Shown here: in pieces, positions 19,920 through 57,279 of the stretch
Position numbering within the stretch: the first letter of the stretch is position 1
How the letters are laid out: each line of letters opens with the position of its first letter
IMG/VR virus record: IMGVR_UViG_3300024239_000011
Coordinates: 434,001 to 498,000 of that record
Length of the DNA stretch: 64,000 bases
Reading direction: 5' to 3' (one strand)
The notes under the pieces: generated by a model
Databases searched by the model: none
The model's input: only the letters and a program-made list of their open reading frames with translations
Told to the model about the DNA's origin: nothing
Translations under genes and position numbers: made by a program

Positions 19920-20624
19920 TCATACACCCTTTGAAATAGTGCGCCCAGGATACCAACCTTCGCCAACCAAGTCTAACTCAGAAATATGGATTCGTTTGTT
20001 TTCGGTTCCGTTGGTTATCCATTTCCACTCACGTTTTTTCTCGGCACCTTTCTTATGACCTAACAACATTGCTTCAGTAGGTTCATTATGTCTGGCTTTT
20101 ACGGACTCCGCGATTTTCTCTCGCCATTCATCCGTCTTACCCTTGCCCTTCCGAACCTCTGACATTTTCTCCCGTACTTCATCAGGGAGGTTTTTACCGC
20201 GCCAACCTGAACCTATTCGGTGCCGCACATCATCGGCAAGGTCGTAGGTTTTACCTTTTCGCGGCGATGGGCGTCCTTTTTGTACCTTGCTTATTTTCTC
20301 TCGCGTTTCCGGTGATACGTCAGTGAGAACCGCTTGCTGAAGTATGTTATACTCTGGTTGTAATGTATCCAAGTAATGCTGTTCACGCTCAACTAATATT
20401 TTTTGATCACAGGCGGTTAATTCGGTTATTTCAAAGACAAATGCATCTTCACCATATTTGTTCCAAGCATTTTGAAGATGTTTATTGTGATGTTTACCTT
20501 TACGTAGTTCGCAGCGGTGTTCGGAAAATCGTCGTGTTATATCTTTACTTGAGCCGACATACCGTTTTCCGTTCTTTGTATTCCTAATCTGGTAAACACC
20601 TGATCGTTTTATATGCTGTGCCAT
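19920..20624 (-). mobile_element. Free-standing GIY-YIG homing endonuclease with NUMOD3 repeats
   Basis: SGVYQIRN...YVGSS, REQHYLD, ETREKIS/EVREKMS repeats; AT-rich insert within the prkA operon. Confidence 0.9.
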
Positions 20625-20749: not shown

Positions 20750-22693
20750 TCAACCCGCCCGACGAACGCGCATGTACCATTCCACGAGACGGCGCACTTG
20801 GCGTTCGGTGTAGCCCTGCTCCACCATCCGGTTAAGGAAGTCGTGGTGTTTCTTCTCGGTGTCCTTGTCCTTCTTGGCACCGAACGAGATCACCGGCAGC
20901 AAATCTTCGGTGGCGCTGAACATGCGCTTTTCGATGACTTCCTTCATTTTCTCGTAGGAAGTCCACTTGGGCATTTTCCCGGCGTTGTTCGCTTTGTTGC
21001 AAAGCACCCACTGGACGATTTCCTGACGGAAATCCTTGGGATTGGCGATGCCGCACGACTTCTCGATTTTCGACAGTTCAGTGTCGAGAACCGTCATGCT
21101 GAACATCTGACCGGTATCCGGGTCTTTATAATCCACGCCCTGACACCACGCATCCGCATAAGACACGTAACGCTCGAAGATGTTCTGACCGTATTCTGAA
21201 TAGCTGTCCAGATAAGCTTTCTGAAGGGTCTTTTCCAGATGCTCGGCATACTTGGGCGCCAGGAACTCCTTGATGAATTCAATGAGTTGCTGTTCTTTTT
21301 CCTCCGGGAACTGCTCGCGTTTGATTTCCTGTTCCAGCACATACATCAGATGCACGGGATCAGCCGCAACTTCGTTCGGGTCGAAGTTGAAGACTTTGGA
21401 CAGGATTTTGAACGCGAAGCGGGTGGAGATGCCCTCCATACCCTCGTTGACGCCCGCGACATCACGATACTCTTGCATCGTCTTTGCCTTGGGGTCAACG
21501 TCCTTCAGACCTTCGCCGTTGTAGACGCGCATTTTTGAGAACAAGTTCGAGTTCTCGTGCTCCTTCAGACGCGACAGCACGCTGAATTGAGCCAGGATAT
21601 CGAGGGTTTGCGGAGCGCACGGCGATTTTCCGAGGCTACCACCATCCAGCATTTTGCGATAGATGTCCACTTCCTCGTCATAGCGCAGGCAATAGGGTAC
21701 CTTGATGACGCAGATACGGTCCAAGAACGCTTCGTTGTTCTTGTTATTGCGGAAAGTTTGCCACTCGGATTCGTTCGAGTGGGCGAGAATGATACCGTTG
21801 AACGGGATCGCGCCCAGTGACTCGGTACCGATGTAGTTGCCTTCCTGCGTGGCGGTCAGCAGCGGATGCAGCACCTTGATGGGCGCCTTGAACATTTCCA
21901 CGAATTCCATCACGCCCTGGTTTGCACGGCACAGAGCGCCGCTGAACGAGTAGCAGTCCGGGTCATTCTGGCTGTAGTGTTCCAGCTTGCGGATGTCCAC
22001 CTTGCCAACTAGGGCGGAAATGTCCTGATTGTTCTCGTCGCCCGGTTCGGTTTTGCAGATCGCAACCTGCTTAAGACGGCTCGGGATCATCTTGACGACT
22101 TTGAATTTGGAATAGTCGCCACCGACTTCCCCCAGCCGCTTGACTGCCCATGGGGAGGTCAGACCGGTGATGTAGCGGGTCGGAATGTTGTATTCCGCTT
22201 CAATTTCGTCTGCCAACGCCACCGGGAATAGGTTCAGGGGCGATTCGAAAACCGGTGACAGTTCGGAACGTTTACCGTCATCGAATTTCAGCACGTAGAT
22301 CGGGTGCTTTTCCATCAGCGCCTTCAGGCGCTCAGCCAGCGAGGACTTACCACCGCCGACCGGACCAAGCAGGTAGAGAACCTGCTTGCGTTCTTCAAGA
22401 CCCTGCGCGGCGTGGCGGAAATAACCAACGATGCGTTCCACGGTTTCTTCCATACCGAAGAAATCCGCAAAAGCCGGATACCGCTTAATCGTGCGATTCA
22501 TGAAGATACGCGACAAACGCGGATCGGTGCTGGTATCAATAACTTCCGGTTCACCAATTGCCTTAACCATGCGTTCTGACGCAGAGGCATACATCAACGG
22601 GTCGGAGGCGCACTGTTGAAGGTATTCCTCCAAAGACATTTCCTCTTCGTGATCCCGTTGGAATGTCGCCTGGAACTTACTCAAAATCGACAT
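20750..22693 (-). CDS. prkA: PrkA/YeaG family AAA+ serine kinase
   Basis: LLGPVGGGKSSLAE, EPGDENNQDIS, FVEMFKAPIKVLHPLLTATQE, AHSNESEW. Confidence 0.96.
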   Translation of the reverse strand: MSILSKFQATFQRDHEEEMSLEEYLQQCASDPLMYASASERMVKAIGEPEVIDTSTDPRLSRIFMNRTIKRYPAFADFFGMEETVERIVGYFRHAAQGLEERKQVLYLLGPVGGGKSSLAERLKALMEKHPIYVLKFDDGKRSELSPVFESPLNLFPVALADEIEAEYNIPTRYITGLTSPWAVKRLGEVGGDYSKFKVVKMIPSRLKQVAICKTEPGDENNQDISALVGKVDIRKLEHYSQNDPDCYSFSGALCRANQGVMEFVEMFKAPIKVLHPLLTATQEGNYIGTESLGAIPFNGIILAHSNESEWQTFRNNKNNEAFLDRICVIKVPYCLRYDEEVDIYRKMLDGGSLGKSPCAPQTLDILAQFSVLSRLKEHENSNLFSKMRVYNGEGLKDVDPKAKTMQEYRDVAGVNEGMEGISTRFAFKILSKVFNFDPNEVAADPVHLMYVLEQEIKREQFPEEKEQQLIEFIKEFLAPKYAEHLEKTLQKAYLDSYSEYGQNIFERYVSYADAWCQGVDYKDPDTGQMFSMTVLDTELSKIEKSCGIANPKDFRQEIVQWVLCNKANNAGKMPKWTSYEKMKEVIEKRMFSATEDLLPVISFGAKKDKDTEKKHHDFLNRMVEQGYTERQVRRLVEWYMRVRRAG

Positions 22694-22931
22694 TTCTCGA
22701 TCCTTGTCCGATTCCACCACCAAGGAACATCAATTCGATGCCCCAATACGATATAGCCACAAGAGCAATAGCCTGTCACTAAGTTTTGGGCCAAAGCGCG
22801 ATTTGATACCGCGCTCTCTGTGGCGATCCCGGTGAAAATATGCATACCCCAAGTCCATGGTGTTTGACTACGAATAAATTGAAGATTCGTTTATGGTTGT
22901 GATAGGACGTATCAAACGACAGGAGACAGTC

Positions 22932-23786
22932 ATGAAGCTTACGTTTTTGGGTTCTGGAAGCGCATTCTTTCCGCCATGGGAAGGAAATTATCAGTCTAAT
23001 ATGCTTCTCGAAACCGTAGATAAGCGACGTTTGATGATTGATTGTGGGACACACGCAGCACAATCTCTTCATGACGCTGGTTTGACGGTTTTCGACCTTG
23101 ATGCCTTTTATGTAAGTCACCAACATGCTGATCATATTGGTGGATTGGAGGAAGTTGCCTTCAAAACCTATTTTTCCCGTCTCGCCACTCTGCGCCAGAA
23201 ATACAACCTCCCCCAGGAAGACATGGTTGACCTGATGCAGATGTTTGCTGATAGTGGCGAAGTGCCCATGAAGACGCTTAAGCCGAAGCTGTTTGCGAAT
23301 GGTTCGATGCTTAACTACATCTGGGCGGAAAGCCTCAAGGGCGGGCTTGCAAGCATTCAGGGTAAAGTGGTCACGCTAGGTGACTACTTCGAATTGGTAG
23401 GTGTGCCGCGCAACGGTTCGTTTACCTGGGAAGGGGTCGAATTTCGGCTCATCCGTACCATCCATATCATGGATGGGTATGATTTTGTTCCGTCCTATGG
23501 GTTGATGTTTGAGGTGAATGGTAAGACCATTTTCATCACAACGGACTCACAACATTGTCCGAACCAGATCATGGACTTCTATCAAATGGCTGACATCATT
23601 TTTCAGGACTGTGAAACTACTCCCTTTAAGAGCGGGGTTCATGCCCATTTCTCGGATTTGTCTACCCTTCCGGCGGAAATCAAAGCCAAGATGTGGTTGT
23701 ACCACTTCAATCCGGGTGAGAAGCCGGATGCGGTGGCGGCGGGGTTCGCCGGATACGTCCAGAAGGGTCAGGTGTTCGATGTCTAA
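22932..23786 (+). CDS. MBL-fold cyclic nucleotide phosphodiesterase, Apyc1-like
   Basis: GSGSAF, IDCG...LHDAG, SHQHADHIGGLEEVA, W..SLKGGL, L.DYF, IFQDC, GVHA. Confidence 0.8.
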   Translation: MKLTFLGSGSAFFPPWEGNYQSNMLLETVDKRRLMIDCGTHAAQSLHDAGLTVFDLDAFYVSHQHADHIGGLEEVAFKTYFSRLATLRQKYNLPQEDMVDLMQMFADSGEVPMKTLKPKLFANGSMLNYIWAESLKGGLASIQGKVVTLGDYFELVGVPRNGSFTWEGVEFRLIRTIHIMDGYDFVPSYGLMFEVNGKTIFITTDSQHCPNQIMDFYQMADIIFQDCETTPFKSGVHAHFSDLSTLPAEIKAKMWLYHFNPGEKPDAVAAGFAGYVQKGQVFDV

Positions 23787-23916
23787 GGATGGATGGTTCG
23801 TAGCGTGGATACAGCGGCTATTTTGCCGTCACGAACGGGCGGGTGTCTTCCGGAACCCCGGTGGTAACAAGCTCATATACCACTGCTGGAATTGTGACAA
23901 GTATTGGACCAAATGA
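23779..23916 (+). CDS. Small Zn-ribbon-like protein
   Basis: MSKDGWF...FCRH...CWNCDKYWTK; start overlaps the upstream stop. Confidence 0.5.
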   Translation: MSKDGWFVAWIQRLFCRHERAGVFRNPGGNKLIYHCWNCDKYWTK

Positions 23917-23919
23917 GTT

Positions 23920-23941
23920 AAGGCGGGATTTCTCCCGCCTT
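23920..23941. terminator. Terminator between convergent genes
   Basis: AAGGCGGGA...TCCCGCCTT. Confidence 0.7.
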
Positions 23942-24416
23942 ATTTTTTGAGCCAAACTTGATCAGGGCGGAAGATGATGTATTCAGCTATATTGTATGAA
24001 TCGCCATCAAACACCACACCATCGTGAACCGACCGATCTACCATTTTCATTGCTTCACGCTTGGCATTTCCAAACGTCATCCCCTTACGCCGGAATTTTT
24101 TGATCAGCGGTGTGATGTTGAGCGGGTTCTGAATTTTCAGGTACGCCGATATAAGACGCTTACGCGGTCCTGATCCCCGGCGTGCAAAACTATAGGCATA
24201 CTCTGGGGATGGAGAGAAGTAAGTTCCCTCAATATCATCATTTCGATGTACCGGCGCCGCTTTGGTATCGAACGTATCAAAATCATGAGAAGTCCCATGG
24301 TAAACCAGAAGCGGTTTGCCAGTTTTCTTATCGACCACCACGCTGTTCCCAAACCATTGGGAGAACTGCGGATCGGTTGCGACTTCATCTTCTAAAAGGA
24401 TTTCGGAAAGGCGCAT
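23940..24416 (-). CDS. ADP-ribosyltransferase-like protein (ART-PolyVal type)
   Basis: MRLSEILLE; FSQWFGNSVVVD...PLLVYHGT, GTYFSPSPEYA, AYLKIQNPL, DGVV, EYIIFRPDQV. Confidence 0.78.
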   Translation of the reverse strand: MRLSEILLEDEVATDPQFSQWFGNSVVVDKKTGKPLLVYHGTSHDFDTFDTKAAPVHRNDDIEGTYFSPSPEYAYSFARRGSGPRKRLISAYLKIQNPLNITPLIKKFRRKGMTFGNAKREAMKMVDRSVHDGVVFDGDSYNIAEYIIFRPDQVWLKK

Positions 24417-24458
24417 TAATACCTCGCTACGACACGAGGTATTTAGGTAGCCACGAAC

Positions 24459-24490
24459 AAAAAAGGCGCTGGTGAAACCAGCGCCTTCTT
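24459..24490 (-). terminator. Terminator of the ancestral DUF932 gene
   Basis: AAAAAAGGCGCTGGT...ACCAGCGCCTT. Confidence 0.7.
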
Positions 24491-24504
24491 GGATGTGACG
24501 TTGA

Positions 24505-24639
24505 TTACGCCGCCATTTCCAGCGCCACCTTCATGGCGTGGTCCTTGATGGTCAGACCGCGCCCAACGGTGTTGTTGAACATGCGGGTTTCGTCATTTGA
24601 ACCCGCGACATGATCCATGAAATAAGTTACAGGATTGAA
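24505..24639 (-). pseudogene. Orphaned 3' end of the DUF932 gene
   Basis: Translates FNPVTYFMDHVAGSNDETRMFNNTVGRGLTIKDHAMKVALEMAA*, homologous to the C terminus of 25590-26684. Confidence 0.85.
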
Positions 24640-24673
24640 TAAATAAAAATATAAACGGAGGAAGGAATTATTA

Positions 24674-25567
24674 ATGTTTACAGCCGTAGATAGAACTCCA
24701 TATACATATCATATTTGTTGGACTAATTATGATGTTCATTACTATGGAATACGATGGGCCAAAGGATGTAGTCCACAAGAACTTTGGTCAAAATACTTTA
24801 CATCGTCTTCGAGCGTGCATAATTTTAGAGCAATTTATGGTGATCCTGATGTTGTTGAGGTGCGTCGAATTTTCGATGATATTACAAAAGCCCGTTTATG
24901 GGAGAATACTGTTCTGCGACGCCTGAAGGTCATCTACCGTGATAAATGGCTGAATAAAACTGACAACATATCTATTGCGCCAGAATGTTGCCGAAGTGCG
25001 TTTGGTAAACCTGCTCTTAATCGAGATACTTCAATCTACCGTTTTTTCCATCCCGAATATGGTCAGCGCGAATATACACGCCATCAATGGATGGTAGAGT
25101 TCCCCTCCTTAAATTCGACCACCGTTTGTATGTTGATACGGGGGCGAGTAAAACAACATCAGGATTGGGTTCTGGGCACCGATGAAGATTATCTTCGTGT
25201 AATGGCGGAAACGCATCAAAGTCGTAGCGCGGCTGCATCAACCCGTATACGTACTAATGAAAGTAATCGGAAACGAAGTGCTACACTAAAAGGTCGGTTA
25301 ATAACCGAAGAACATGCGCAAAAAATAAGTCAATCAAAACGTGGGATAAGGCAAAGTGATAAGACACGTATGAAGTTAAGAGATAAAAAACGCCAAGATA
25401 GTAGAATCTTTAAATTCTACTGTGATGGTCGTGAAATTTTTCATGGTACAAAATATGAATTTTTCGATCAATTCAAAAATGATTATGATTTGAAAAAAGG
25501 TGGTTTTAATTATCTTATCGCAGGGATTTGGTTGACATATAAAGGAATAACAAGCGAAGTGGTCTAG
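24674..25567 (+). mobile_element. Free-standing Seg-like (GIY-YIG variant) homing endonuclease
   Basis: PYTY....YYGIR...YFTSS, WE..VL, WLN; NUMOD3-like EEHAQKIS/KTRMKL; AT-rich. Confidence 0.8.
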
Positions 25568-25580
25568 ACCACTTCGCTTG
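25551..25580. terminator. 30 bp perfect palindrome between convergent genes
   Basis: CAAGCGAAGTGGTCTAGACCACTTCGCTTG. Confidence 0.6.
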
Positions 25581-25589
25581 TTATTGGTG

Positions 25590-26684
25590 TTATGCAGCCT
25601 TTGCAAATTCCAGGGCTACTCGTAGCCCATGTTCCTTGATGGCGACAGAACGACCGATTGTCGCATTGTACATACGACTTTCATCATTATTACCGAATAC
25701 ATGGTCAAGAACATATGTACAGCCGTTCAGCGCCGACCAAACCTTGCCACGCGAGGACGGAAGGTCAAGACCGGGCTGGTCATTGAACGCTTTAGCAGCG
25801 CGCTTGAACAGGTTTTTGCCACTGATCAGTTCACTGTTGATGTTCGCGACCGCATCCAGGGTTTTCGGCATGGTCATCTTGTATTCCTTCCCGTCCACCA
25901 CGACCAGAAGCGTTTTCTCGTTGAGAACCAGCTTGGGGGCGAACACGCGGGCGAGGTAGCGAACGATGCCCTGTTCATTGATGGCGGCAGTCGAGAGGAT
26001 TGCCGCCTGATCCTTGAACGTTGTCATGGCATGTTTCATCCCAAGGGAAACTTTCATTTCCTCGATGGCATCCGCATCGAATTCGCGAGAATGGCTCAGC
26101 CGCCATTCGCCAATTGCCCCATTTTTCCCAGCGGTCAACCCTTTTTCATTAAGACCCACCGCCATCGTATTGGCGCACACCACGCGGGTCATCAGGAACT
26201 TCCAGATCATCGACCGCCCGAACTTGTGGAAGTTGAACCCCGCGAAATAACCACGCACTTCGTCGCCGCCAGCCAGCGAGAACGCCTCGGTCGTCTTGGC
26301 GAGAAACCAGACCACGGTACCATTCTTGAGGGCACCAGCCGTTTCCATGGTCATCTGACCGTTTTCGACATATTCCGCGAAGACATTAGCGGCGTCGATA
26401 TTCTGAACGGGCTTGAACTTGTTGCCCACGATATCGAGACACACGGGATTGGTTTCGCCCTTATAAACGGGCGGACGCACCAGCATGTTGTTGCCGAGAT
26501 TGACGGAGACACCATTGATTTCGGACGGCAACGGCATGACTTCGACGTTCCAACCGAGGTTGGCGCGGTCCACCCACATACACGGCGGCAGATTCTCATC
26601 GATGGGGACGCCAAGATTGTGCCAGGGACGACCGCCCGATACCGCCCATGCCATTGACCGCGCATCAACAAGATCGTGTGCCAT
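25590..26684 (-). CDS. DUF932/DUF945 phage-plasmid family protein
   Basis: MAH, PWHNLG, ANLGWNV, FKPVQN, ETAGALKNG..VW.LA, RVVCANT. Confidence 0.85.
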   Translation of the reverse strand: MAHDLVDARSMAWAVSGGRPWHNLGVPIDENLPPCMWVDRANLGWNVEVMPLPSEINGVSVNLGNNMLVRPPVYKGETNPVCLDIVGNKFKPVQNIDAANVFAEYVENGQMTMETAGALKNGTVVWFLAKTTEAFSLAGGDEVRGYFAGFNFHKFGRSMIWKFLMTRVVCANTMAVGLNEKGLTAGKNGAIGEWRLSHSREFDADAIEEMKVSLGMKHAMTTFKDQAAILSTAAINEQGIVRYLARVFAPKLVLNEKTLLVVVDGKEYKMTMPKTLDAVANINSELISGKNLFKRAAKAFNDQPGLDLPSSRGKVWSALNGCTYVLDHVFGNNDESRMYNATIGRSVAIKEHGLRVALEFAKAA

Positions 26685-26844
26685 GATGTCCTCCTAAATT
26701 ACGTCACCAAATTTATCGTGACGCGCCTAGATTGTCAACCCATCATTTTCGTTGCCAAATTTAGACGTGTTTAACAGACAATCATCCCAAATAGCAAAGC
26801 ATAAATACCTCTAACGGCATGGTTACCTTAGAGGTTCTTTAGTC

Positions 26845-27015
26845 ATGATAGATAAAGCTGACAAGCTTGAGCAGCTTTTCGCGAGCAAAACCAAAGAGAA
26901 GGAAATCCGCGAAAAGAACCCAATAGTTAAGCAGGCGTGGGAACGCTACCAAGAGGTACTTGAGCTTTACATGAAAGCTGATACCCCTCGGCGCGCAAAG
27001 GAAGCCACTGCGTAA
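26845..27015 (+). CDS. Small hypothetical protein (56 aa)
   Basis: MIDKADKLE...REKNPIVKQAWERYQ; preceded by TAAATA and a GAGG SD. Confidence 0.65.
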   Translation: MIDKADKLEQLFASKTKEKEIREKNPIVKQAWERYQEVLELYMKADTPRRAKEATA

Positions 27016-27180: not shown

Positions 27181-27768
27181 TCACTCGACCCATTTCAGTT
27201 TGAAGAGGGTGGCATCCGAGGATTTTTGAAAGGCATACACGACGGAATTCAGTCCAGCAGTTGCCCAAATCGTCCAGGGCATACGTACTGTTTTCGCGAT
27301 CCATTCGTGTAAATCGTCGTTGTCCAGCGATTCCTTTGGCATTTCCACCCAGTACGGCAGCAGTTCCTTGATTGCATCCCCAAAAGAACTGGTGGTGCAA
27401 TTCTTCACGCGCTCCCACCACGGTCCATTAAAGAAAAATTCCCATTTGAGGCGTTTGTTTTTGTCAATCCACTGTGGGGTGATTTCAATGTGGTTCCCGT
27501 CCAAATACGGATTGAAGGTCGCATTGAAGGTTTCTGGCTCCCATCGGAGGACGTATTTTACAGCGTGGTTGATGTTGGGAATTACCAGCATACAAGAATC
27601 TGCTTCGCAGTAGTTATGAGCGTAGCGTTGAGCAACCGTGATTTTACCATCAGTAGAAGTAAGATGAAATTTGATTTTTTGTTTACGCAACCATAACACT
27701 ATTGTTAGTGGTAACTGCTTTTGGTAGAACTTGAATTGTATGGACATTCCTGACTCCAAAGCCTGCAT
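27181..27768 (-). CDS. ATLFxLxW family protein (two repeats)
   Basis: Ends FQKSSDATLFKLKWVE; internal HAVKYVLRW. Confidence 0.7.
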   Translation of the reverse strand: MQALESGMSIQFKFYQKQLPLTIVLWLRKQKIKFHLTSTDGKITVAQRYAHNYCEADSCMLVIPNINHAVKYVLRWEPETFNATFNPYLDGNHIEITPQWIDKNKRLKWEFFFNGPWWERVKNCTTSSFGDAIKELLPYWVEMPKESLDNDDLHEWIAKTVRMPWTIWATAGLNSVVYAFQKSSDATLFKLKWVE

Positions 27769-28073
27769 CTATCCTGTATACAGGATTGACAGGGTTCCTC
27801 GTCAATTATCGTTTTTTCTTCCCATCGCAGACGGAATAAAGTGGCATCACTTGTTTTTTGGAAATAATAACTGGTGTGTAACTTTCTATTATTGCTCGTT
27901 ATAAAAACCTCGGCAGCACAATGACCAACAATCCATAGGTCAATTTCTTTAGTATGGGATTGATCCAGTATCACGCATTGACGCATTTTAGTCGTCAATG
28001 CAATACCCCAGCGTCGGGAAATTGTTCCCACGTTATCACCGGTATTTCTGGAAAGCACTGTACCCATCAGCAC
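27705..28073 (-). CDS. ATLFxLxW family protein
   Basis: YYFQKTSDATLFRLRW. Confidence 0.65.
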   Translation of the reverse strand: MLMGTVLSRNTGDNVGTISRRWGIALTTKMRQCVILDQSHTKEIDLWIVGHCAAEVFITSNNRKLHTSYYFQKTSDATLFRLRWEEKTIIDEEPCQSCIQDRCRLWSQECPYNSSSTKSSYH

Positions 28074-28336
28074 CAGCGTATCTTAAACAGGGTCGCGTGT
28101 TGGCTCTGTTTGAAGCGGAATTGCCCTGAATTCCACGTCACGTAGCACCACAGGTTTTCGCCTGTTTTTTTGACCCGTTTCTCGGTACCAAAAATACTTC
28201 GAAGGCTTTGGGGGCATTTTGGACAATCCCCAATGGTTTCCCAAAGCCAGAATACGATAGGCTGACGGGAATTGACTGGAAATGGAATGGTTACCAAGTA
28301 GGGGTATTCAACCTCAACACCCATCATCAGCACCAT
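28067..28336 (-). CDS. ATLFxLxW family protein
   Basis: FRFKQSQHATLFKIRWC. Confidence 0.7.
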   Translation of the reverse strand: MVLMMGVEVEYPYLVTIPFPVNSRQPIVFWLWETIGDCPKCPQSLRSIFGTEKRVKKTGENLWCYVTWNSGQFRFKQSQHATLFKIRWC

Positions 28337-29085
28337 TTCATACGGAAAAGGGTTGCGTGTTTTTTTTCTTTAAACATGATTTTTCTGGGGGCGCGAATTA
28401 CCGGGAACGGGTAGCGGTCATATTCTTTCGTCATGAGGTGGGTTGGGCGGTACCCGTGTGGGGCGATGTGTTCCAACCAATCAAACAACCGCCACTCATT
28501 GAAATTGAACCGGGGACTGAAATCGTATTCCACCGCCGCTTTTGCAGTTGCCATTCCCATACCAATTTCATATTGATGCGTCGTGTATATCTGCTCATGA
28601 ACCGGACGGTCAATTTGTGCGATTAGTTGATCACGGGCAACCATTTGTGTCATTACTAGTTCAGCCATCCGACTACAAATTTGGTTGTATATCGGATCAT
28701 TGCGGCTTTCTTCATCATCAAAGCCTTTAATGTCGAATGCAATCCATCCTCCTGATCGCCAACCATCAAATTCGCTGTGAAAATTCCAGGCGCGAGCTAC
28801 GCATGCAATTTTGTTTTCATGCTGGACTACCTCGGTATCAAGATTTCGGATTGCCAGGATCGTTCCGTCTTCGAGCGTGACCGATCCCTTCTTCATTGCT
28901 GCTTGTACCCTAGGGTCGTGTTGACGCACGACATGGGCGATGCCCGCACTCCATTCGCGAAGGTATTCCTCTTCGTCACCAATACGTTGACCGTTATCAA
29001 CAATCCCATTTACCTGCTTAACAAATTCTGGGTTTTGTTCTTCTTCACCAAGCTTGGTAAGAAATTCTTGAAGTCGCTGGTTCAT
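28327..29085 (-). CDS. Hypothetical protein with C-terminal ATLFxLxW domain
   Basis: IMFKEKKHATLFRMKWC. Confidence 0.7.
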   Translation of the reverse strand: MNQRLQEFLTKLGEEEQNPEFVKQVNGIVDNGQRIGDEEEYLREWSAGIAHVVRQHDPRVQAAMKKGSVTLEDGTILAIRNLDTEVVQHENKIACVARAWNFHSEFDGWRSGGWIAFDIKGFDDEESRNDPIYNQICSRMAELVMTQMVARDQLIAQIDRPVHEQIYTTHQYEIGMGMATAKAAVEYDFSPRFNFNEWRLFDWLEHIAPHGYRPTHLMTKEYDRYPFPVIRAPRKIMFKEKKHATLFRMKWC

Positions 29086-30125
29086 GCGACATTCCAATCG
29101 GTAAATTGTCGCACGATGAATTGCCCACATGCTGCACGAACCTCGCTGCCAACGCTGATCTGAACCTTTAAGAACGGGATTTCAGCAGCAAGACGATCCA
29201 AAATCGTTTCGAACCGGTCGCTTTCGGACAACGGGGTGTTATCGCAATGATTGTAGCGCAGGATGCGGAATTCGTATTTTTCCAGACCGTGCTTTTTATG
29301 GAAGTTGATTAAAGCGTCGATTTCCCGGTCACTATCGTTCACGCCATGGATGAACATGTGGTGGAAAATGACGTTATGCTGGTTTCCCTCCGCATACTCT
29401 TTCAATGTCACCACGGACTCGTCTAGGGGCGTGGCACCAGGGATGATTTCGTTTCGAGTTTCTTGAATTGCCGAGTGCAAAGAGTAAAAAACTCGAAAAC
29501 GGCTGCGGTTGATATATTCCTGGGGACCAGTTGCGTCTTGGGCATGAACCATCAGTTTGTTGTTGGGGTTGGTTGGAAACTGCTTTAGCTGATAGTCCAA
29601 CTCGTGAAATACATCCATCCAGCGTCGGTGAATGTGGGGCGGAAGTACCGTCGCTAGATCGACGCCATCCACACCAGCCGCTAATTTATTATCCATCACA
29701 TGAGTGAGGAAATCCATCGTCAGTCGGGCGGTGCGATCTGGGCGAATCATTTGATCTTCGCCCATACCCATCCAACACAGCTTCACGTAACGATCAGCAA
29801 TGCCAGGATCATGGTCGGCTTGTACCGCAAGCGCAGATTTAAGGTTTTCCAGAATCGCGCTTTCATCCAGTTTTGCGTATTTCATCCCCTTCATAGTGAG
29901 ATAACAAAACTTACATTTCATGAAGCATCCAGCCGATGCCGAGGCAAACACGCTGTACTTATTGCGGTCAATGGAATTATGTTCAAGCTTGCCAGTCACC
30001 GGATTGCGAATAGTATCGCACGAACTAACCATTTTCACGGCGGTTTCACTGTTATCCGCGTGAATAATTTTGGTAGTTAACGAATCATCACTGACAAATA
30101 CTTCCTGCTCATCTAGCATGGACAT
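29082..30125 (-). CDS. RlmN/Cfr-like radical SAM enzyme
   Basis: GCFMKCKFC, MGMGE, YSLHS, GVNDS, G.EVRAACGQ. Confidence 0.85.
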   Translation of the reverse strand: MSMLDEQEVFVSDDSLTTKIIHADNSETAVKMVSSCDTIRNPVTGKLEHNSIDRNKYSVFASASAGCFMKCKFCYLTMKGMKYAKLDESAILENLKSALAVQADHDPGIADRYVKLCWMGMGEDQMIRPDRTARLTMDFLTHVMDNKLAAGVDGVDLATVLPPHIHRRWMDVFHELDYQLKQFPTNPNNKLMVHAQDATGPQEYINRSRFRVFYSLHSAIQETRNEIIPGATPLDESVVTLKEYAEGNQHNVIFHHMFIHGVNDSDREIDALINFHKKHGLEKYEFRILRYNHCDNTPLSESDRFETILDRLAAEIPFLKVQISVGSEVRAACGQFIVRQFTDWNVA

Positions 30126-38288: not shown

Positions 38289-38821
38289 TTCTTTGACGCC
38301 TGCGGGAGATCGTTGTATTCGCTCGTCCAATACGAGCCAAGTTGTTTTCGTGCCCAATCCATGACTTTGTGGCTATAATTCCATACGTAACCATGCTCAT
38401 ACGCCAACCCGAAGCCAACTTCCCACGCGGTGCCTTCTGCGGACATAGTAGACATGGTGTAGCCACGACCACGGAGAACGGTTGTAGACATGACATGATG
38501 CCCAAGTTCATGGAAGAATGCGGCTATTTCAATCTCTGGGTCGTCAAACTCACCCATGAAGATTTCGTTCCCTGCGCATGCAGCATGATTACGACCGCAA
38601 TTCTCGGTATCGCGATAAACGGTGACCTTGTAAAGCTTTGCAATCCGATTGATTTCTGGTGACAAATCGTTGGATACGGGTCCACGATATTTCTCACGAA
38701 ATCGCCATATTCCGGTCAGCCGGGTATGTACCATCGCCATTTTGTGATGGTATTCGCGCATCATATAACATAATGCCCGCAAATAATCAAAACCCGTTTT
38801 GTGATCTTCAGTTTTACTCAT
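38279..38821 (-). CDS. HExxH metallopeptidase-like protein
   Basis: FFHELGHH...E..AW. Confidence 0.6.
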   Translation of the reverse strand: MSKTEDHKTGFDYLRALCYMMREYHHKMAMVHTRLTGIWRFREKYRGPVSNDLSPEINRIAKLYKVTVYRDTENCGRNHAACAGNEIFMGEFDDPEIEIAAFFHELGHHVMSTTVLRGRGYTMSTMSAEGTAWEVGFGLAYEHGYVWNYSHKVMDWARKQLGSYWTSEYNDLPQASKKCK

Positions 38822-39314
38822 CCCATTTCAACCTATAAAGGGTGGCGTATTTTTTCTCTTTAAAAATGTAAAACTGCCGTTGTGGTTTATCGGCTTTGAA
38901 TTGATAGCGAATGTATTCAGTTTCGTTTAATGTCTCACGTTGCCAAGCCCATTCTTCATCAGTACATGGACCTGTGACTATGGCACACCCCGTCATATCG
39001 ATGATTTCTTCAATAACTTGAGCAAGGAATTCAGCTTGGCGTTGCCAATACCCGGCTAGTTCTTCATACTCTTCAGCTTTTTTAATAAATGTTTCCGCGT
39101 AATCGAGATCACCAGATTCGCTTTCCGCTTCTTTTATAAACCGATACAACGTCGCTTGGTCATCATCTGCATCGGCTTTGCAAACGGCGTTCTGGATGGT
39201 TCTAATCGCCCCCAGAAGGCGTCGTTTCTCGTAATCGGATGATGAAGGCTCCGCTGGTGCTTCAGCGGCAAATCCCGCCAAGACCTCTTTCAGCGAAGCC
39301 CCCATAATCTTCAC
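38814..39314 (-). CDS. Hypothetical protein with C-terminal ATLFxLxW domain
   Basis: YIFKEKKYATLYRLKWDE. Confidence 0.7.
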   Translation of the reverse strand: MKIMGASLKEVLAGFAAEAPAEPSSSDYEKRRLLGAIRTIQNAVCKADADDDQATLYRFIKEAESESGDLDYAETFIKKAEEYEELAGYWQRQAEFLAQVIEEIIDMTGCAIVTGPCTDEEWAWQRETLNETEYIRYQFKADKPQRQFYIFKEKKYATLYRLKWDE

Positions 39315-40234: not shown

Positions 40235-40786
40235 ATGGGAAAGAGGTCTGATTTTGAACGAGTTGAACGCGATTTCTATCCAAGCCCCTATGCTGCTGTT
40301 ATCCCGTTATTTCCGCACCTTGCTGCCGGTACTCACTTTGACGAGCCGTGTTGCGGCGATGGGGCACTAATCAAGCATCTTGAAAAGAACGGGCACGTTT
40401 GTTCGTTTTTCTCGGACATCGAGCCACAAATCGACGCGCCGCGCCTGGATGTATTTTCGCTGACCGAATGTCGCGGCGATGTGTTCATTACCAATCCCCC
40501 ATGGGATCGCAAAATTCTTCACCCTCTCATCGATCACCTGACCAATTTGGCCCCAACTTGGCTCTTGTTTGATGCGGATTGGGCACATACCGTTCAGTCT
40601 GGTCCCTACATGCAATATTGCCGTAAGATCGTAAGTATCGGTCGCGTCAAGTGGATTGAAGACTCAAAGATGACCGGAAAGGATAATGCCTGTTGGTACC
40701 TCTTCGATAAGAAAGCAGACGGACCAACTGTGTTTTACGGTCGAAAAACCGACCAGTCCTTGAATTCAGCGTTGTTTCAGTTTTGA
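40235..40786 (+). CDS. Amino-DNA methyltransferase (probably N6-adenine)
   Basis: DFYPSP, EPCCGDG (motif I), ITNPPW (motif IV). Confidence 0.85.
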   Translation: MGKRSDFERVERDFYPSPYAAVIPLFPHLAAGTHFDEPCCGDGALIKHLEKNGHVCSFFSDIEPQIDAPRLDVFSLTECRGDVFITNPPWDRKILHPLIDHLTNLAPTWLLFDADWAHTVQSGPYMQYCRKIVSIGRVKWIEDSKMTGKDNACWYLFDKKADGPTVFYGRKTDQSLNSALFQF

Positions 40787-41763
40787 TAGCGCCACCCATA
40801 GCCTCCGGTGGATTTGCGTTTGCCTTTGCATACTGCGGCGATGTTCGCTCCATTGAGCATGTTCATCGCCGCTGCCGCCGACGCAATGCATTCAAAGGAT
40901 TCTAGAACTTCGCCGGTCACCAAATCAATTTTCTCCACCGGGCGCATCTGATCGCGGTTTCCTTCACGGATTCGCTGTTTGTGATCGTCAGACAATTGGC
41001 GGGCATCTTTAGTTGGTTCGGTGACATATCGCCAGCCGAAACCTCCGTGAGTCTTAGATGGTCCCCCTTTGCACACTCGACTAATGCTTGCTGCTTGCAA
41101 ATCTAACGTTTTTGCTGCCTCGCTAATCGACTGAAATACCCGAATAAGCGTTCTATAGTCCGGGGTAAATTGTTGAACAGCAAGCCATTGATGGGAATTT
41201 GCAAGCCTTCTCTTTTCAACCACGTCTTGCGGTTGTTTCTTTCCCCAACGATGACTTTCTTGCCCTCGTTTATGGGGGTTATTTTGCTTCCAAAACTCAG
41301 ACCGAGTTTCTTTTTGTTCATCCGACATTTGCTTACCAAACATTGGGTTTTTGTCCCCAAGTTTCGCTTGGCGAATGTGGTCGGCGTGCGTGTCAGATTT
41401 TTTCTTCCCTTTAAGGGATTTGCTGAGATTTTGACGGTGTAGGGCGGTGGCAATGTACCCATAGGTACCTTCACCACCGTCCGTCATATTCATCCCGATA
41501 CCAGTTGGATACCGAACCATGTTGGTTTGGTATTCTTCTATAAGCATGATCTCTTTCATCATTGCTTCTTCTGGCGACCCATACGAGGCAACTTCGACCA
41601 TGACAAAGTTCTCTCTGCCGTATTTCTGGATGCAATTTTGGAGATAGCAGTTTTTCTTGTCACCACGACAGTGACGTTCAAACCGCTTCTCCAAAGGTTG
41701 CCGTGTCCAGCCAAAGTATACTTTGCCGGTTATTGTGCATGTGATCTTGTAGACTGTGTTCAT
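40777..41763 (-). mobile_element. Free-standing GIY-YIG homing endonuclease (NUMOD3 plus two NUMOD1)
   Basis: VYKITC...VYFG.T, GMNMTDGGEG, KNPMFGK; two F.SI.EAA...I..VCKG....GG.GWRY repeats. Confidence 0.9.
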
Positions 41764-48946: not shown

Positions 48947-49870
48947 ATGCCTAAGGGCAATCCCTTTACAACAGAAATGTTCATCGAGAAATGTCGCCAT
49001 ATTCATGGTGATCGTTATGATTATTCTCTAGTAGAGTATAAGAACGCACAGGAGAAGGTCAAAATTATTTGCCTCGCCCATGGTGTGTTTGTGATGTACG
49101 CGAAACATCATACACGTGGGCATGGATGTCCTGAATGTGGTAAAATTTCTACAGGAAAGAAGAAAAGACTTGATTTGCCGGAATTTCTAACGAAAGCCAA
49201 ATCAATTCACGGTGATCGGTATGATTATTCATTAGTCGTCTACGAGACTGCTAAAGTACCCGTTGAAATTATTTGTCCGATCCATGGAAGTTTCTGGCAA
49301 ACCCCTGATTGTCACATTGGTTTAAAAGAATCAGGTTGTAGCAAATGCAGCGGTATGTTCAAAAAAGATACACAGTATTTTATCGAACAAGCTAAATTGA
49401 TACATGGTGATACTTACGATTATTCAAAAGTTGTTTATCAAACCGTAAAAGATCAAGTAGAAATTATTTGTCGAATGCATGGAAGTTTTTTACAAACCCC
49501 GGATAGTCATCTAAATACAAAAAGTGGATGTCCGCGATGCGTTTCTCTAATATCTGATCAAGAAACTGCATGGTTAAATCATCTTGGAATCCCCAATGAT
49601 CCCACTCATAGGCAGGTATATCTCAGGCTAGATGATGGGTCGCGAATCCACGCAGACGGGTATGTTGCGTCAACTAATACCATTTATGAATATTATGGTG
49701 ACTATTACCACGGGAACCCAAATGTGTATGATCATCGAAAAATGAATACGACGTGTAAAAAGACCTTTGGTGAATTACACGAGCGTACCATAAAACGAGA
49801 AGAACGGATATTACGCTCCGGGTACAAGCTTGTAACTATGTGGGAAGCACAATGGAAGAGTGGCGGCTAA
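48947..49870 (+). mobile_element. Putative homing endonuclease (three Zn-binding repeats plus C-terminal nuclease)
   Basis: Three FI.KA..IHGD.YDYS.V.Y......V.IIC..HG.F...P..H....GC..C repeats; ADGY...IYEYYGDYYHGNP...WE. Opposite strand to its neighbours. Confidence 0.8.
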
Positions 49871-55909: not shown

Positions 55910-57279
55910 CAGAAATTCCTATACTTGGTTAGCTGCCCAACCCACGAAATACCAACCGCATTTGCATAGTATCCAGCAGCACCGTATAATCCGATGTGGA
56001 CGTTGAAGATGCCATAGTTGGTATCGTTAACACTGGTCCATGCAGGGGTCATATTAACGGTATAGCGAAGAGGAACGCCCGCATATCCCGAGTTGCCTGA
56101 CGCGGTGTAATACCAGTCGAAAATTTTGGTCAAACCCGTGAAGATGTTGATTTTATAGTCTTTGACCTTGGATGCAGGGACACCACAGGCTTTGAATATA
56201 TCAAACTGAAAATCCAGCGAGAAACTGGTGCCGTGAACTGACGCATAGAAATAGGTTTCGAGACGAACATACGATCCGTTTTTCGGAAGCGTTATATAGG
56301 CATCGGTAGTATACCCGGCACCTTTATCGACAACCGAGAATGCTTTGATGGCGCCATTATCTACGATAGGCTGAAATACTGCTGGGGTTGTATGGGTACC
56401 GTGAATGGTAATTGGACCGAGATTGGAGGCATATCCGGCGCCGGAATCGATCACGCGCACAGCAAGTATTTTACCGTTACCCAGCGTGACAGAGATCGCC
56501 CCGCCGGTTCCTGAAGTATCTTCGATGACGACGGTTGGGTTGGTATAATCGCGCCCGCGCGTAATCATTCGCGCTCCCGTGATCACACCATTGGTGACAT
56601 CAAGCGCCATTTCCGCGCCATATCCAGTTGGATCGGTAATGCGGGCAGTCGGTTCGGTGTATCCATGACCGCCAGCAGTTACCGTAACAGTGTCAATCAA
56701 CCCATCACCGAGAATCGGTACCGCGTATGCACGCATGTAGTTTAGGTTTTCATTGACGAATGGATTGAGAGTAATCCCGCCGGTACTCGTACCGGAGTAC
56801 GTGAAACCCTCATTAGCCGCACTACCATTGACGATGTACAGAGGCATTGCACTGTTCGAGTCGTCTGGCATGTAGTCTTCTACCGATGGTGGGAAGAAAC
56901 TTCCACCGGTTCCGGTATGGCTGGTGTTGTGCCAAATATCGAACGACCCCACCGACATCTTGAAGAAGTCGGAGATCATCCCGGCCAACATTTCCACGGT
57001 CATGTTGGCGTTTGGGTCCACAAATTCCAGATCACTGCTATTAGTGACCAGATCGAGCAACGATACCAGCGGGGTCCATTCTCCATCCTGATACACTTCA
57101 AGAGCGCCAGTTGAACCACCACCAACGTTGATGTCGGTGTTATAGCGGATTTGCCCAGAAGTGGGGCTACGATCACCAACTACAGTGCTTTCACGGTCAT
57201 CGGTAGACCCGGATGGCATCGCAATAAAGCCATGTCCATTCACTTCTACGGTTGATGGTTCCAGTCTACCAAATTTCAT
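55909..57279 (-). CDS. Tail/baseplate-associated protein
   Basis: PSGSTDDR, GQIRYNTD; repeated V...G.GYT.P beta repeats. Confidence 0.72.
   Translation of the reverse strand: MKFGRLEPSTVEVNGHGFIAMPSGSTDDRESTVVGDRSPTSGQIRYNTDINVGGGSTGALEVYQDGEWTPLVSLLDLVTNSSDLEFVDPNANMTVEMLAGMISDFFKMSVGSFDIWHNTSHTGTGGSFFPPSVEDYMPDDSNSAMPLYIVNGSAANEGFTYSGTSTGGITLNPFVNENLNYMRAYAVPILGDGLIDTVTVTAGGHGYTEPTARITDPTGYGAEMALDVTNGVITGARMITRGRDYTNPTVVIEDTSGTGGAISVTLGNGKILAVRVIDSGAGYASNLGPITIHGTHTTPAVFQPIVDNGAIKAFSVVDKGAGYTTDAYITLPKNGSYVRLETYFYASVHGTSFSLDFQFDIFKACGVPASKVKDYKINIFTGLTKIFDWYYTASGNSGYAGVPLRYTVNMTPAWTSVNDTNYGIFNVHIGLYGAAGYYANAVGISWVGQLTKYRNF

What the first reader, a model, noticed from the sequence alone, without database searches (positions are those of the whole stretch)
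24459..25760. Homing endonuclease insertion that replaced the 3' end of its target gene
Seen: the DUF932 gene ends LNGCTYVLDHVFGNNDESRMYNATIGRSVAIKEHGLRVALEFAKAA in AT-richer codons. Beyond the antisense endonuclease lies a start-less homologous tail, FNPVTYFMDHVAGSNDETRMFNNTVGRGLTIKDHAMKVALEMAA* (24505-24639), in GC-rich codons like the gene body and followed by a terminator. Inference: the element inserted about 45 codons before the stop and supplied a diverged, cleavage-resistant replacement C terminus, giving intron-less gene repair and predicting the cut region.
Basis: partly seen in the sequence, partly recalled or inferred. Interest (0 to 1): 0.68.

Follow-up and report, generated by a model that had tools for sequence, protein, structure and literature searches.

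The report
Homing endonuclease cassette replaced a gene end
In a 543-kb phage genome, a 1.1-kb selfish cassette (a GIY-YIG homing endonuclease gene plus a foreign copy of the last 43 codons of its target gene) sits inside a DUF932 gene and has pushed the gene's own tail downstream as an orphan; this layout is known from fungal mitochondria, and I found no description of it in phages.

Summary
The DUF932 gene (25590-26684, minus strand) switches codon composition after codon 321. GC3 falls from 0.70 to 0.33, a drop reached by 0 of 2000 permutations. Downstream lie an 18-bp perfect hairpin, an antisense 297-aa Seg-like GIY-YIG endonuclease (GC3 0.29), and then a start-less copy of the gene's last ~41 codons. 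That copy has body-like GC3 (0.68), its own stop codon and a strong intrinsic terminator. The two tails share 23 of 42 residues but only 57% of nucleotides. Joining the body to the orphan gives SALNG|VTYFMDHV; the closest endonuclease-free relative (51% identity, syntenic) has SLNG|VTFFLDHV.

Three other phage contigs carry endonucleases of this family in the same convergent position on DUF932 3' ends. One of those genes has its own GC3 break in the same conserved motif.

Endonuclease activity, the cut site and cleavage resistance of the new tail remain inferred. No close endonuclease-free allele exists in any collection searched.

The arrangement matches the mobile-ORF gene hybrids of fungal mitochondria (Allomyces atp6, Glomus atp6/atp9/cox2/nad3). 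I rate it a new member of a known kind, of moderate interest.

The parts
25722..26684 (-). DUF932 gene body, codons 1-321 (resident, GC3 0.70)
   Evidence: Pfam PF06067 E 1.1e-26. Maximum-likelihood GC3 change point after codon 321. The AlphaFold model has pLDDT 88, and the junction lies inside helix 315-329.
25590..25721 (-). Replacement C-terminal tail, codons 322-364 plus stop. It is in frame and completes the expressed gene; GC3 is 0.33-0.37.
   Evidence: It keeps the family-invariant T323, H328 and G344 and the near-invariant D327, G331, K350 and A357. It deviates at the near-invariant V322 (Cys) and A353 (Gly).
25546..25585 (.). Perfect 18-bp inverted repeat with a 4-nt loop, between the new tail's stop and the endonuclease's stop; it overlaps the last endonuclease codons. 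Likely a bidirectional terminator or RNA-stabilising hairpin of the cassette.
   Evidence: Folding gives -29 kcal/mol on either strand, z -10.3 and -8.0. No good U-tract follows on either strand. Logan contigs break here.
24674..25567 (+). Free-standing Seg-like GIY-YIG homing endonuclease gene, 297 aa, antisense and convergent to DUF932; GC3 0.29.
   Evidence: PHROG 314 E 4e-9. All 13 invariant columns of the family alignment are kept, including Y12, Y23, G25, E77 and N94; Y10, Y24 and R27 are >=90% conserved. Of 30 aligned family sequences (the window protein itself hits neither family), 20 hit NUMOD3 and 12 hit SegE_GIY-YIG. The best structural matches are the I-TevI catalytic domain, then UvrC GIY-YIG domains.
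24631..24673 (+). AT-rich leader of the endonuclease gene with a GGAGGAAGG ribosome-binding site; right end of the insert.
   Evidence: Read directly from the sequence. No promoter was called here by the consensus scan.
24505..24630 (-). Orphan native C-terminal tail of DUF932, 41 codons plus stop, no start codon; GC3 0.68.
   Evidence: It keeps V and A at the two near-invariant family positions where the new tail deviates.
24456..24490 (-). Intrinsic terminator of the original DUF932 gene: 10-bp GC-rich stem, 5-nt loop, U-tract.
   Evidence: Fold -27.2 kcal/mol, z -6.5. The endonuclease-free relative L012 has the same stop-then-terminator layout.
26710..26738 (-). Promoter-like site upstream of DUF932 (TTGACA-17-TAAATT).
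   Evidence: Consensus scan, 10 of 12 matches. This is a consensus match only.

Best explanation
Proposed history and mechanism:

1. A free-standing GIY-YIG homing endonuclease gene originally sat just downstream of, and convergent to, a DUF932 gene in a lower-GC phage.
2. During a mixed infection the enzyme cut the DUF932 gene of this megaphage's ancestor, in or beside the conserved helix motif LNG-VTY-x-x-DH about 43 codons before the stop.
3. The break was repaired from the donor. On the left, repair crossed over inside the conserved motif. It then copied the donor's last 43 codons, the hairpin and the endonuclease gene.
4. On the right there was no homology beyond the endonuclease gene. 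That end was joined illegitimately to the recipient's broken end, so the recipient's own last ~41 codons, stop and terminator survive as an untranslated orphan.
5. The result is an intact chimeric DUF932 gene with no intron or intein. The insertion splits the original target sequence, and the new tail shares only 57% of nucleotides with the old one (longest common word 10 nt). Neither recombination between the copies nor re-cleavage is therefore expected.
6. Flanked by body and orphan tail, the 1.1-kb cassette could now home into endonuclease-free relatives by ordinary double-strand-break repair.

Shown: the anatomy, the compositional chimerism, and the recurrent association of this endonuclease family with DUF932 3' ends. 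Inferred: enzyme activity, the cut position, the repair route and immunity of the new tail.
For: - The GC3 change point falls after codon 321 (0.70 to 0.33, log-likelihood ratio 11.2, 0 of 2000 permutations). This coincides with the start of the duplication.
- The new tail's GC3 cannot be told from the endonuclease's (p 0.30), and the orphan's cannot be told from the body's (p 0.86).
- The tails share 23/42 residues, 13 of them through different codons, and 57% nucleotide identity. They are each other's best match among 70 family tails: score 138 against at most 117.
- The orphan keeps its stop and a strong terminator, as in the endonuclease-free syntenic relative L012.
- Body plus orphan gives SALNG|VTYFMDHV, against SLNG|VTFFLDHV in L012.
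- The endonuclease is intact, with all invariant GIY-YIG family residues and an I-TevI-like fold as best match.
- Related endonucleases lie convergent and overlapping on DUF932 3' ends in L006, L097 and L107. These three cluster in the catalytic-domain tree (SH-aLRT 85).
- The L107 DUF932 gene has its own GC3 break 39 codons before the stop, in the same motif (0.58 to 0.26, p 0.004). The endonuclease-free L012 has none.
- The arrangement is present in contigs of three sequencing runs, all from one study, two of them from samples not flagged as a possible source of this DNA, and in a separate JGI contig.
- No group I or II intron was found.
Against: - No closely related endonuclease-free allele and no donor were found. 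Polarity therefore rests on composition and layout, not on a before-and-after comparison.
- Overall identity to L012 does not separate the tails (48% each). The current tail ends in AKAA like most relatives, while the orphan ends in EMAA, although L097 also ends in EMAA.
- The window's endonuclease is not resolved into the clade of the three other DUF932-associated endonucleases. Its DNA-binding region is unrelated to that of L006.
- The window protein itself has no significant Pfam hit, and the Foldseek E-value is weak (0.19).
- No promoter for the endonuclease was identified.
- Gene composition in this genome is heterogeneous: GC3 ranges from 0.29 to 0.80 among long ORFs.
Confidence: 0.72

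Rival explanations
1. The endonuclease is only a passenger. An illegitimate recombination or module exchange between two phages, not started by this enzyme, brought in the foreign tail together with the neighbouring endonuclease gene.
For: No activity data exist. Phage genomes are mosaic. The region between DUF932 and PrkA also holds accessory genes (ART-PolyVal, Apyc1-like) that are absent from the relative L012. The right junction is non-homologous.
Against: The left junction falls in the most conserved motif of the C-terminal third. The insert is a minimal unit of tail plus hairpin plus endonuclease. Four independent genomes place this endonuclease family at DUF932 3' ends. One of them has a composition break in the same motif.
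Confidence: 0.12
2. The polarity is reversed. The current AT-rich tail is native, and the GC-rich orphan is a fragment of a previous host's DUF932 gene that the endonuclease cassette dragged in and dropped after the stop codon.
For: The current tail ends in AKAA like the closest relatives. Identity to L012 is equal for both tails.
Against: This would need a native gene that changes GC3 from 0.70 to 0.33 exactly where the homology to the orphan starts. It would also need a foreign fragment that happens to match the resident body's GC3 (0.68 vs 0.70) and carries a resident-type terminator. The orphan, not the current tail, keeps the near-invariant V322 and A353.
Confidence: 0.08
3. The 3' end was duplicated in place, the endonuclease gene later landed between the copies, and the upstream copy diverged in situ.
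For: The two tails are each other's best match within the family.
Against: Synonymous sites are saturated (13 of 23 conserved residues use different codons; 57% nucleotide identity), yet the orphan shows no decay. A shift of GC3 from about 0.68 to 0.37 within one genome, restricted to 43 codons and matching the adjacent endonuclease, is not expected from in-place drift.
Confidence: 0.06
4. Assembly artefact: a chimeric join at the palindromic hairpin.
For: The k-mer-based Logan contigs all break at the 40-nt palindrome.
Against: Each flank is contiguous with its unique neighbours up to the palindrome in three runs. The 543-kb record and a separate 5.5-kb JGI contig both span the palindrome identically. 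The only alternative joins at a palindrome are fold-backs.
Confidence: 0.02

Closest known systems
Mobile-ORF (mORF) gene hybrids of fungal mitochondria: Allomyces macrogynus atp6, Glomus sp. atp6/atp9/cox2/nad3, Rhizopus oryzae atp9, Mortierella verticillata cox2 (as described in PMC3630166)
   Same: An endonuclease ORF moves together with a foreign carboxy-terminal coding segment. That segment joins the resident gene in frame, and the native carboxy-terminus is left downstream as a duplicate. The copies are strongly diverged at the DNA level (63.5% in Glomus atp6, 57% here). The Glomus atp9 element also encodes a GIY-YIG enzyme.
   Different: The host here is a 543-kb phage, not an organelle. 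The endonuclease is antisense and convergent to the target gene, with a shared hairpin, whereas the mitochondrial elements are drawn as following the inserted C-terminal, in two cases in phase with the gene. The target is a gene of unknown function. Here there is no close endonuclease-free relative to show that the native tail is the resident one, as Allomyces arbusculus did for A. macrogynus.
Intronless homing and marker exclusion by free-standing Seg and Mob endonucleases of T-even phages (review PMC2988022)
   Same: A free-standing GIY-YIG endonuclease next to a conserved gene. Cleavage occurs in genomes that lack it, and flanking gene sequence is co-converted from the donor. L006, L097 and L107 look like this classical arrangement.
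   Different: The T-even cases are described as intergenic insertions or as gene-splitting insertions (mobE in nrdA, mobA in gene 60). The review does not mention a duplicated or displaced gene end (the word 'duplicat' occurs 0 times).
Integrative elements that carry a replacement 3' end of their target gene (e14 and phage 21 in icd; elements in tRNA genes) - recalled from my own knowledge, not checked here
   Same: The outcome is the same: the target gene stays intact because the incoming element supplies a new 3' end, and the old 3' end remains as a pseudo-fragment.
   Different: Those elements use a site-specific recombinase and attachment sites. The 1.1-kb insert here encodes only the endonuclease.

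Membership tests
GIY-YIG homing endonuclease (Seg-like, free-standing) | Catalytic motif residues: Tyr pair of 'GIY', 'YxG', Arg, Glu, Asn | tested here: met
   Y10/Y12, Y23-Y24-G25, R27, E77 and N94 are invariant or >=90% conserved in a 30-sequence alignment, and all are present in the window protein.
GIY-YIG homing endonuclease (Seg-like, free-standing) | Significant match to a curated GIY-YIG profile | tested here: inconclusive
   The window protein has no Pfam hit at E<=1. It matches PHROG 314 'homing endonuclease' at E 4e-9. Twelve of 30 relatives hit SegE_GIY-YIG (best E 5.6e-5), and 20 of 30 hit NUMOD3.
GIY-YIG homing endonuclease (Seg-like, free-standing) | GIY-YIG alpha/beta fold | tested here: inconclusive
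   The N-terminal ~100 residues are modelled at pLDDT 85-97. The top three Foldseek hits are the I-TevI catalytic domain (prob 0.82-0.89, target TM 0.58-0.62), followed by UvrC GIY-YIG domains, but E is about 0.2.
GIY-YIG homing endonuclease (Seg-like, free-standing) | Presence/absence polymorphism among related genomes at the same site | tested here: inconclusive
   The syntenic relative L012 (51% identity) lacks it. No closer relative exists in the collections. No endonuclease-free joint was seen in 4 runs.
GIY-YIG homing endonuclease (Seg-like, free-standing) | Site-specific cleavage of the endonuclease-free allele | not testable with these tools
   Needs protein expression and a cleavage assay.
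mORF-type gene hybrid with carboxy-terminal replacement (Allomyces atp6 type) | Endonuclease ORF flanked by two copies of the target gene's 3' coding segment, the upstream copy in frame with the gene | tested here: met
mORF-type gene hybrid with carboxy-terminal replacement (Allomyces atp6 type) | The downstream copy is the resident one and the upstream copy is foreign | tested here: met
   Met by composition (change point, Fisher tests), by terminator layout and by the junction motif. Not resolved by overall identity to the nearest relative.
mORF-type gene hybrid with carboxy-terminal replacement (Allomyces atp6 type) | Only the inserted tail is expressed with the gene | not tested
   No RNA data were examined. 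The new tail has its own stop and a hairpin, and the orphan lacks a start codon.
Group I/II intron or intein carrying the endonuclease | Self-splicing RNA structure, or an in-frame protein-splicing domain, joining the body to the orphan tail | tested here: not met
   No intron family in Rfam at E<=1. The endonuclease is on the opposite strand, and the new tail ends in a stop codon.
Recombinase-driven island with a replacement gene end (e14/icd type) | Integrase or recombinase gene within the insert | tested here: not met
   The 1091-bp insert holds only the tail, the hairpin and the endonuclease ORF.

The most novel reading that the evidence does not exclude
A lineage of Seg-like GIY-YIG endonucleases is specialised on the conserved C-terminal helix motif of phage DUF932 genes. 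It travels as a two-part cassette: a recoded end of the target gene plus the endonuclease. Because the cassette brings its own functional gene end, it can invade the coding sequence of very distant phages (from ~150-kb phage contigs, one with T4-type genes nearby, to a 543-kb megaphage) even where no downstream homology exists. This would be a phage counterpart of the mitochondrial mORF elements and an intron-free route into coding sequence.
Probability: 0.35. Interest if true: 0.6.

Novelty: new member of a known kind. Interest (0 to 1): 0.42.

Why it matters
It shows, in an uncultivated megaphage, how a free-standing homing endonuclease can enter a coding sequence without an intron or intein and without destroying the gene. 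It does so by bringing a diverged replacement for the gene end that it displaces.

It gives a concrete, testable target site: the LNG|VTY..DH motif of DUF932, window 25722|24630. It also marks DUF932, a widespread phage and plasmid protein of unknown function, as a recurrent endonuclease target, which usually signals a conserved and important gene.

For annotation, orphan gene ends next to endonuclease genes are fossils that date and orient lateral transfers. Sharp GC3 change points in gene tails can reveal the same transfers where no orphan remains, as in L107.

Tried and rejected
- DNA search of the 2.5-kb region against 50,697 phage records: no match.
- Protein-pattern search for close DUF932 relatives in IMG/VR: none.
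- Word-index protein search: the nearest DUF932 relative other than self has 51% identity, and the nearest endonuclease relative has 38%.
- Donor searches in IMG/VR with the hairpin and with a degenerate new-tail pattern: no match.
- Metagenome scan with a degenerate orphan-tail pattern: only the genome itself.
- Reads and contigs of 4 runs: no endonuclease-free joint. The one run from a second study held only two 151-nt pieces, one on the orphan tail and one on the gene body, so it is uninformative.
- PDB sequence searches with the endonuclease and with its family profile: nothing meaningful.
- DUF932 fold search in the PDB: no match, so the target gene's function stays unknown.
- Tail-versus-relatives scoring does not separate the native tail from the foreign one.
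- 80 further DUF932 loci from IMG/VR: none has an endonuclease of this family immediately downstream, and none has a second DUF932-like tail segment.
- L006, L097 and L107: no orphan tails.
- The PrkA gene next to a second GIY-YIG gene: no tail duplicate and no composition break.
- Genome-wide scan for orphan gene ends: the only other candidate followed up (an N-terminal duplicate in L094) is a paralogue pair with no recognisable endonuclease between the copies, though the intervening 159-aa ORF was not scanned against any profile library.
- Literature searches found no phage case of a displaced gene end next to a homing endonuclease. This is not proof that none is published.
- No promoter for the endonuclease could be named.
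- The large representative-protein search and the complex predictor were not used, because they were not needed.
Full report
**Source and setting.** The window is positions 434001-498000 of a 543,035-bp virus record, a megaphage that CheckV rates 100% complete. Its genome GC is 0.487. Contigs identical or nearly identical to the region occur in three subsurface or soil metagenome runs of one study and in a separate 5.5-kb JGI contig.

**Observation.**
- The minus strand carries a 364-aa DUF932 gene at 25590-26684 (Pfam PF06067, E 1.1e-26; PHROG 1221).
- Twenty-two bases beyond its stop, on the opposite strand and converging on it, a 297-aa ORF ends (24674-25567).
- A perfect 18-bp inverted repeat (25546-25585) lies between the two stops and overlaps the last codons of that ORF. 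It folds at about -29 kcal/mol on either strand.
- Upstream of the ORF's ATG are 43 AT-rich bases with a GGAGGAAGG ribosome-binding site.
- Next, on the minus strand, comes a start-less reading frame (24505-24639) that matches DUF932 residues 318-362 at 53% identity. In a six-frame search of the whole genome this is the only second DUF932 match (E 1.2e-11).
- The frame ends in its own stop. About 17 bases later lies a GC-rich hairpin with a U-tract (24456-24490; -27.2 kcal/mol, z -6.5).

**Composition.**
- GC3 is 0.70 in the first 318 codons of DUF932, 0.37 in the last 46, 0.68 in the orphan and 0.29 in the antisense ORF.
- A two-segment likelihood scan puts the break after codon 321 (0.70 against 0.33, log-likelihood ratio 11.2). 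None of 2000 permutations reached that value.
- The current tail differs from the body (Fisher p 2e-5) and from the orphan (p 0.0035), but not from the antisense ORF (p 0.30). The orphan does not differ from the body (p 0.86).
- The break coincides with the start of the duplication. The orphan's first three codons (FNP) match the body's LNG at only 3 of 9 bases, and convincing homology begins at Val-Thr-Tyr.
- I therefore place the insert at 24631-25721 (1091 bp). It comprises 43 replacement codons plus stop, the hairpin, the ORF and its leader.

**The two tails.**
- Over 42 aligned codons, 23 residues are the same. Thirteen of those use different codons, nucleotide identity is 57%, and the longest shared word is 10 nt. 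This is an old divergence between two functional coding sequences, not a recent copy.
- Among 70 family members, each tail's best partner is the other tail (score 138, against at most 117 for any other), so the donor gene belonged to the same DUF932 subfamily.
- Both tails keep the invariant T323, H328 and G344. The orphan also keeps the near-invariant Val322 and Ala353, where the current tail has Cys and Gly.
- Joining the body to the orphan gives SALNG|VTYFMDHV. The closest endonuclease-free relative has SLNG|VTFFLDHV.
- In the structure model of DUF932 (pLDDT 88), the junction lies inside helix 315-329, in the most conserved block of the C-terminal third.

**The antisense ORF.**
- It is a member of a large family of phage proteins. 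The first ~100 residues are highly conserved within the family, and it keeps every invariant position: the Tyr pair, Tyr-Tyr-Gly, Arg, Glu and Asn, which make up the GIY-YIG signature.
- It matches PHROG 314 'homing endonuclease' (E 4e-9).
- Of 30 aligned relatives, 20 hit NUMOD3 and 12 hit SegE_GIY-YIG, though the window protein itself has no Pfam hit.
- Its N-terminal domain is modelled confidently. Its best structural matches are the I-TevI catalytic domain and then UvrC GIY-YIG domains, at weak E-values.
- I call it a Seg-like free-standing GIY-YIG homing endonuclease. The fold and profile tests are supportive rather than conclusive.
- It is a single-copy gene in the genome.
- No intron family is detected in the region. 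The opposite-strand orientation and the stop codon of the new tail rule out an intron or intein reading.

**Relatives.**
- The nearest DUF932 relative is P0002, on a 252-kb contig (locus L012), at 51% identity. It is syntenic: DUF932 is followed by PrkA, DUF444 and SpoVR. It has no endonuclease, one tail, a stop-then-terminator layout and no GC3 change point.
- Nothing closer exists in the 5.8-billion-protein index, in IMG/VR or in the JGI metagenome contigs. No endonuclease-free joint appears in the sequencing runs that hold the region.

**Recurrence of the association.**
- I looked at about 14 distinct genomic contexts of endonuclease relatives. Three have the endonuclease convergent on, and overlapping, the 3' end of a DUF932 gene: L006, L097 and L107.
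- Two others sit in the same way on a YAcAr-domain gene. The rest are beside unrelated genes.
- The three DUF932-associated endonucleases group together in a catalytic-domain tree (SH-aLRT 85). The window's enzyme is unresolved, and a single origin is not excluded. Its DNA-binding region is unrelated to that of L006.
- None of the three loci has an orphan tail.
- L107 is informative. Its DUF932 gene shows a significant GC3 break (0.58 to 0.26, p 0.004) 39 codons before the stop, at NCVTYL|CDH. That is four codons from the equivalent of the window's break, and its endonuclease has GC3 0.32.
- This is what co-conversion of the gene end together with the endonuclease would leave when both flanks are homologous. 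It points independently to the same motif as the site of breakage or crossover.

**Mechanism.**
- The simplest history is as follows. The donor had the classical arrangement of L006, L097 and L107, with DUF932 and the endonuclease convergent.
- The enzyme cut the recipient's DUF932 in or near the conserved motif.
- Repair invaded the donor within the motif on the left and copied the donor tail, hairpin and endonuclease.
- Lacking homology on the far side, repair ended in an illegitimate join to the recipient's broken end. This preserved the recipient's own tail and terminator as an orphan.
- The insertion separates the two halves of the presumed recognition region, and the new tail is too diverged to restore it.
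- The enzymatic steps in this history are inference.

**Rivals.**
- The endonuclease as a mere passenger of an unrelated recombination (about 0.12).
- Reversed polarity, with the orphan as the foreign piece (about 0.08). This requires two compositional coincidences.
- In-place duplication followed by divergence (about 0.06).
- Assembly artefact (about 0.02).

**Comparison with what is known.**
- The arrangement is that of the mobile-ORF gene hybrids of fungal mitochondria. There, an endonuclease ORF brings a foreign carboxy-terminal segment that joins the gene in frame, while the native carboxy-terminus stays downstream.
- Examples are Allomyces macrogynus atp6, Rhizopus atp9, Mortierella cox2 and four genes of a Glomus species. 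In Glomus atp6 the two copies share 63.5% nucleotide identity (PMC3630166).
- It also fits the logic of intronless homing and co-conversion by T-even Seg endonucleases (PMC2988022). That review describes intergenic and gene-splitting insertions but no displaced gene end.
- Four literature searches found no phage example.
- I therefore class it as a new member of a known kind. It is the same device and the same enzyme family in a new genetic system, with an antisense orientation and a shared hairpin as local peculiarities.

**Generality within this genome.** A scan of all ORFs of at least 120 aa for orphan copies of their ends within 4 kb found only this endonuclease-linked case in the 543-kb genome. 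The second GIY-YIG gene in the window, beside PrkA, has left no such trace.

Noticed in passing
window 19920-20624 (-): A second GIY-YIG + NUMOD3 homing endonuclease gene (234 aa, Pfam GIY-YIG E 1e-13, GC3 0.38) lies directly downstream of PrkA (20750-22723). It is unrelated in sequence to the DUF932-linked one. PrkA shows no tail duplicate or composition break.
   Followed up: yes
window 40777-41763 (-) and 48947-49870 (+): Two further likely endonuclease-type genes. The first has an N-terminus similar to the PrkA-linked GIY-YIG protein. The second carries a DUF723 zinc-finger domain (a DNA-binding domain of T5orf172-type homing endonucleases) and has GC3 0.33. Four of the seven lowest-GC3 long ORFs in the window are endonuclease-like.
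   Followed up: partly
window 22893-24416: An ART-PolyVal ADP-ribosyltransferase gene (23940-24416, -) and an Apyc1-like anti-Pycsar metallo-beta-lactamase gene (22893-23786, +) lie between the orphan tail and PrkA. The relative L012 has only a 118-aa ORF there, so this interval is a variable accessory, possibly counter-defence, spot.
   Followed up: partly
window 27181-29130 (-), also 38814-39314 (-): Four tandem ORFs with no Pfam match in the two scanned (27181-27768, 28327-29130) all end in a shared motif, (D/H)ATLF(K/R)(L/I/M)(K/R)W. A fifth ORF 10 kb away shares it. They look like a paralogous family with a conserved C-terminal tag.
   Followed up: no
window 57276-58019 and 58038-59108 (-): Adjacent genes share a 56-residue C-terminal segment at 61% identity (E 1e-21). 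The shorter gene has low GC3 (0.40) and no Pfam match.
   Followed up: no
L107 3513-4454 (-): A DUF932 gene on a 66-kb phage contig with T4-type genes nearby (gp59) has a GC3 break (0.58 to 0.26, p 0.004) 39 codons before its stop. It lies next to a convergent endonuclease of the same family. This suggests a co-converted gene end with no orphan.
   Followed up: yes
L095 3001-4173 and L098 3001-4096: Two relatives of the endonuclease sit in the same convergent, overlapping position on the 3' end of a YAcAr-domain gene. This may be a second recurrent target of the family.
   Followed up: no
window 26556-26592 and 26787-26856: Two runs of the same study carry a strain variant with four substitutions in the 5' part of DUF932, plus substitutions and a 2-nt deletion upstream of it. 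The endonuclease cassette is identical in all runs.
   Followed up: partly
L094 939-1599 and 2219-3442 (genome 11938-14441): Outside the window, a 407-aa Ig-repeat-like protein shares its first 55 residues (65% identity) with a short ORF 1.1 kb upstream that seems to continue in another frame. This is a paralogue pair or a frameshifted copy, and it is not linked to an endonuclease.
   Followed up: partly
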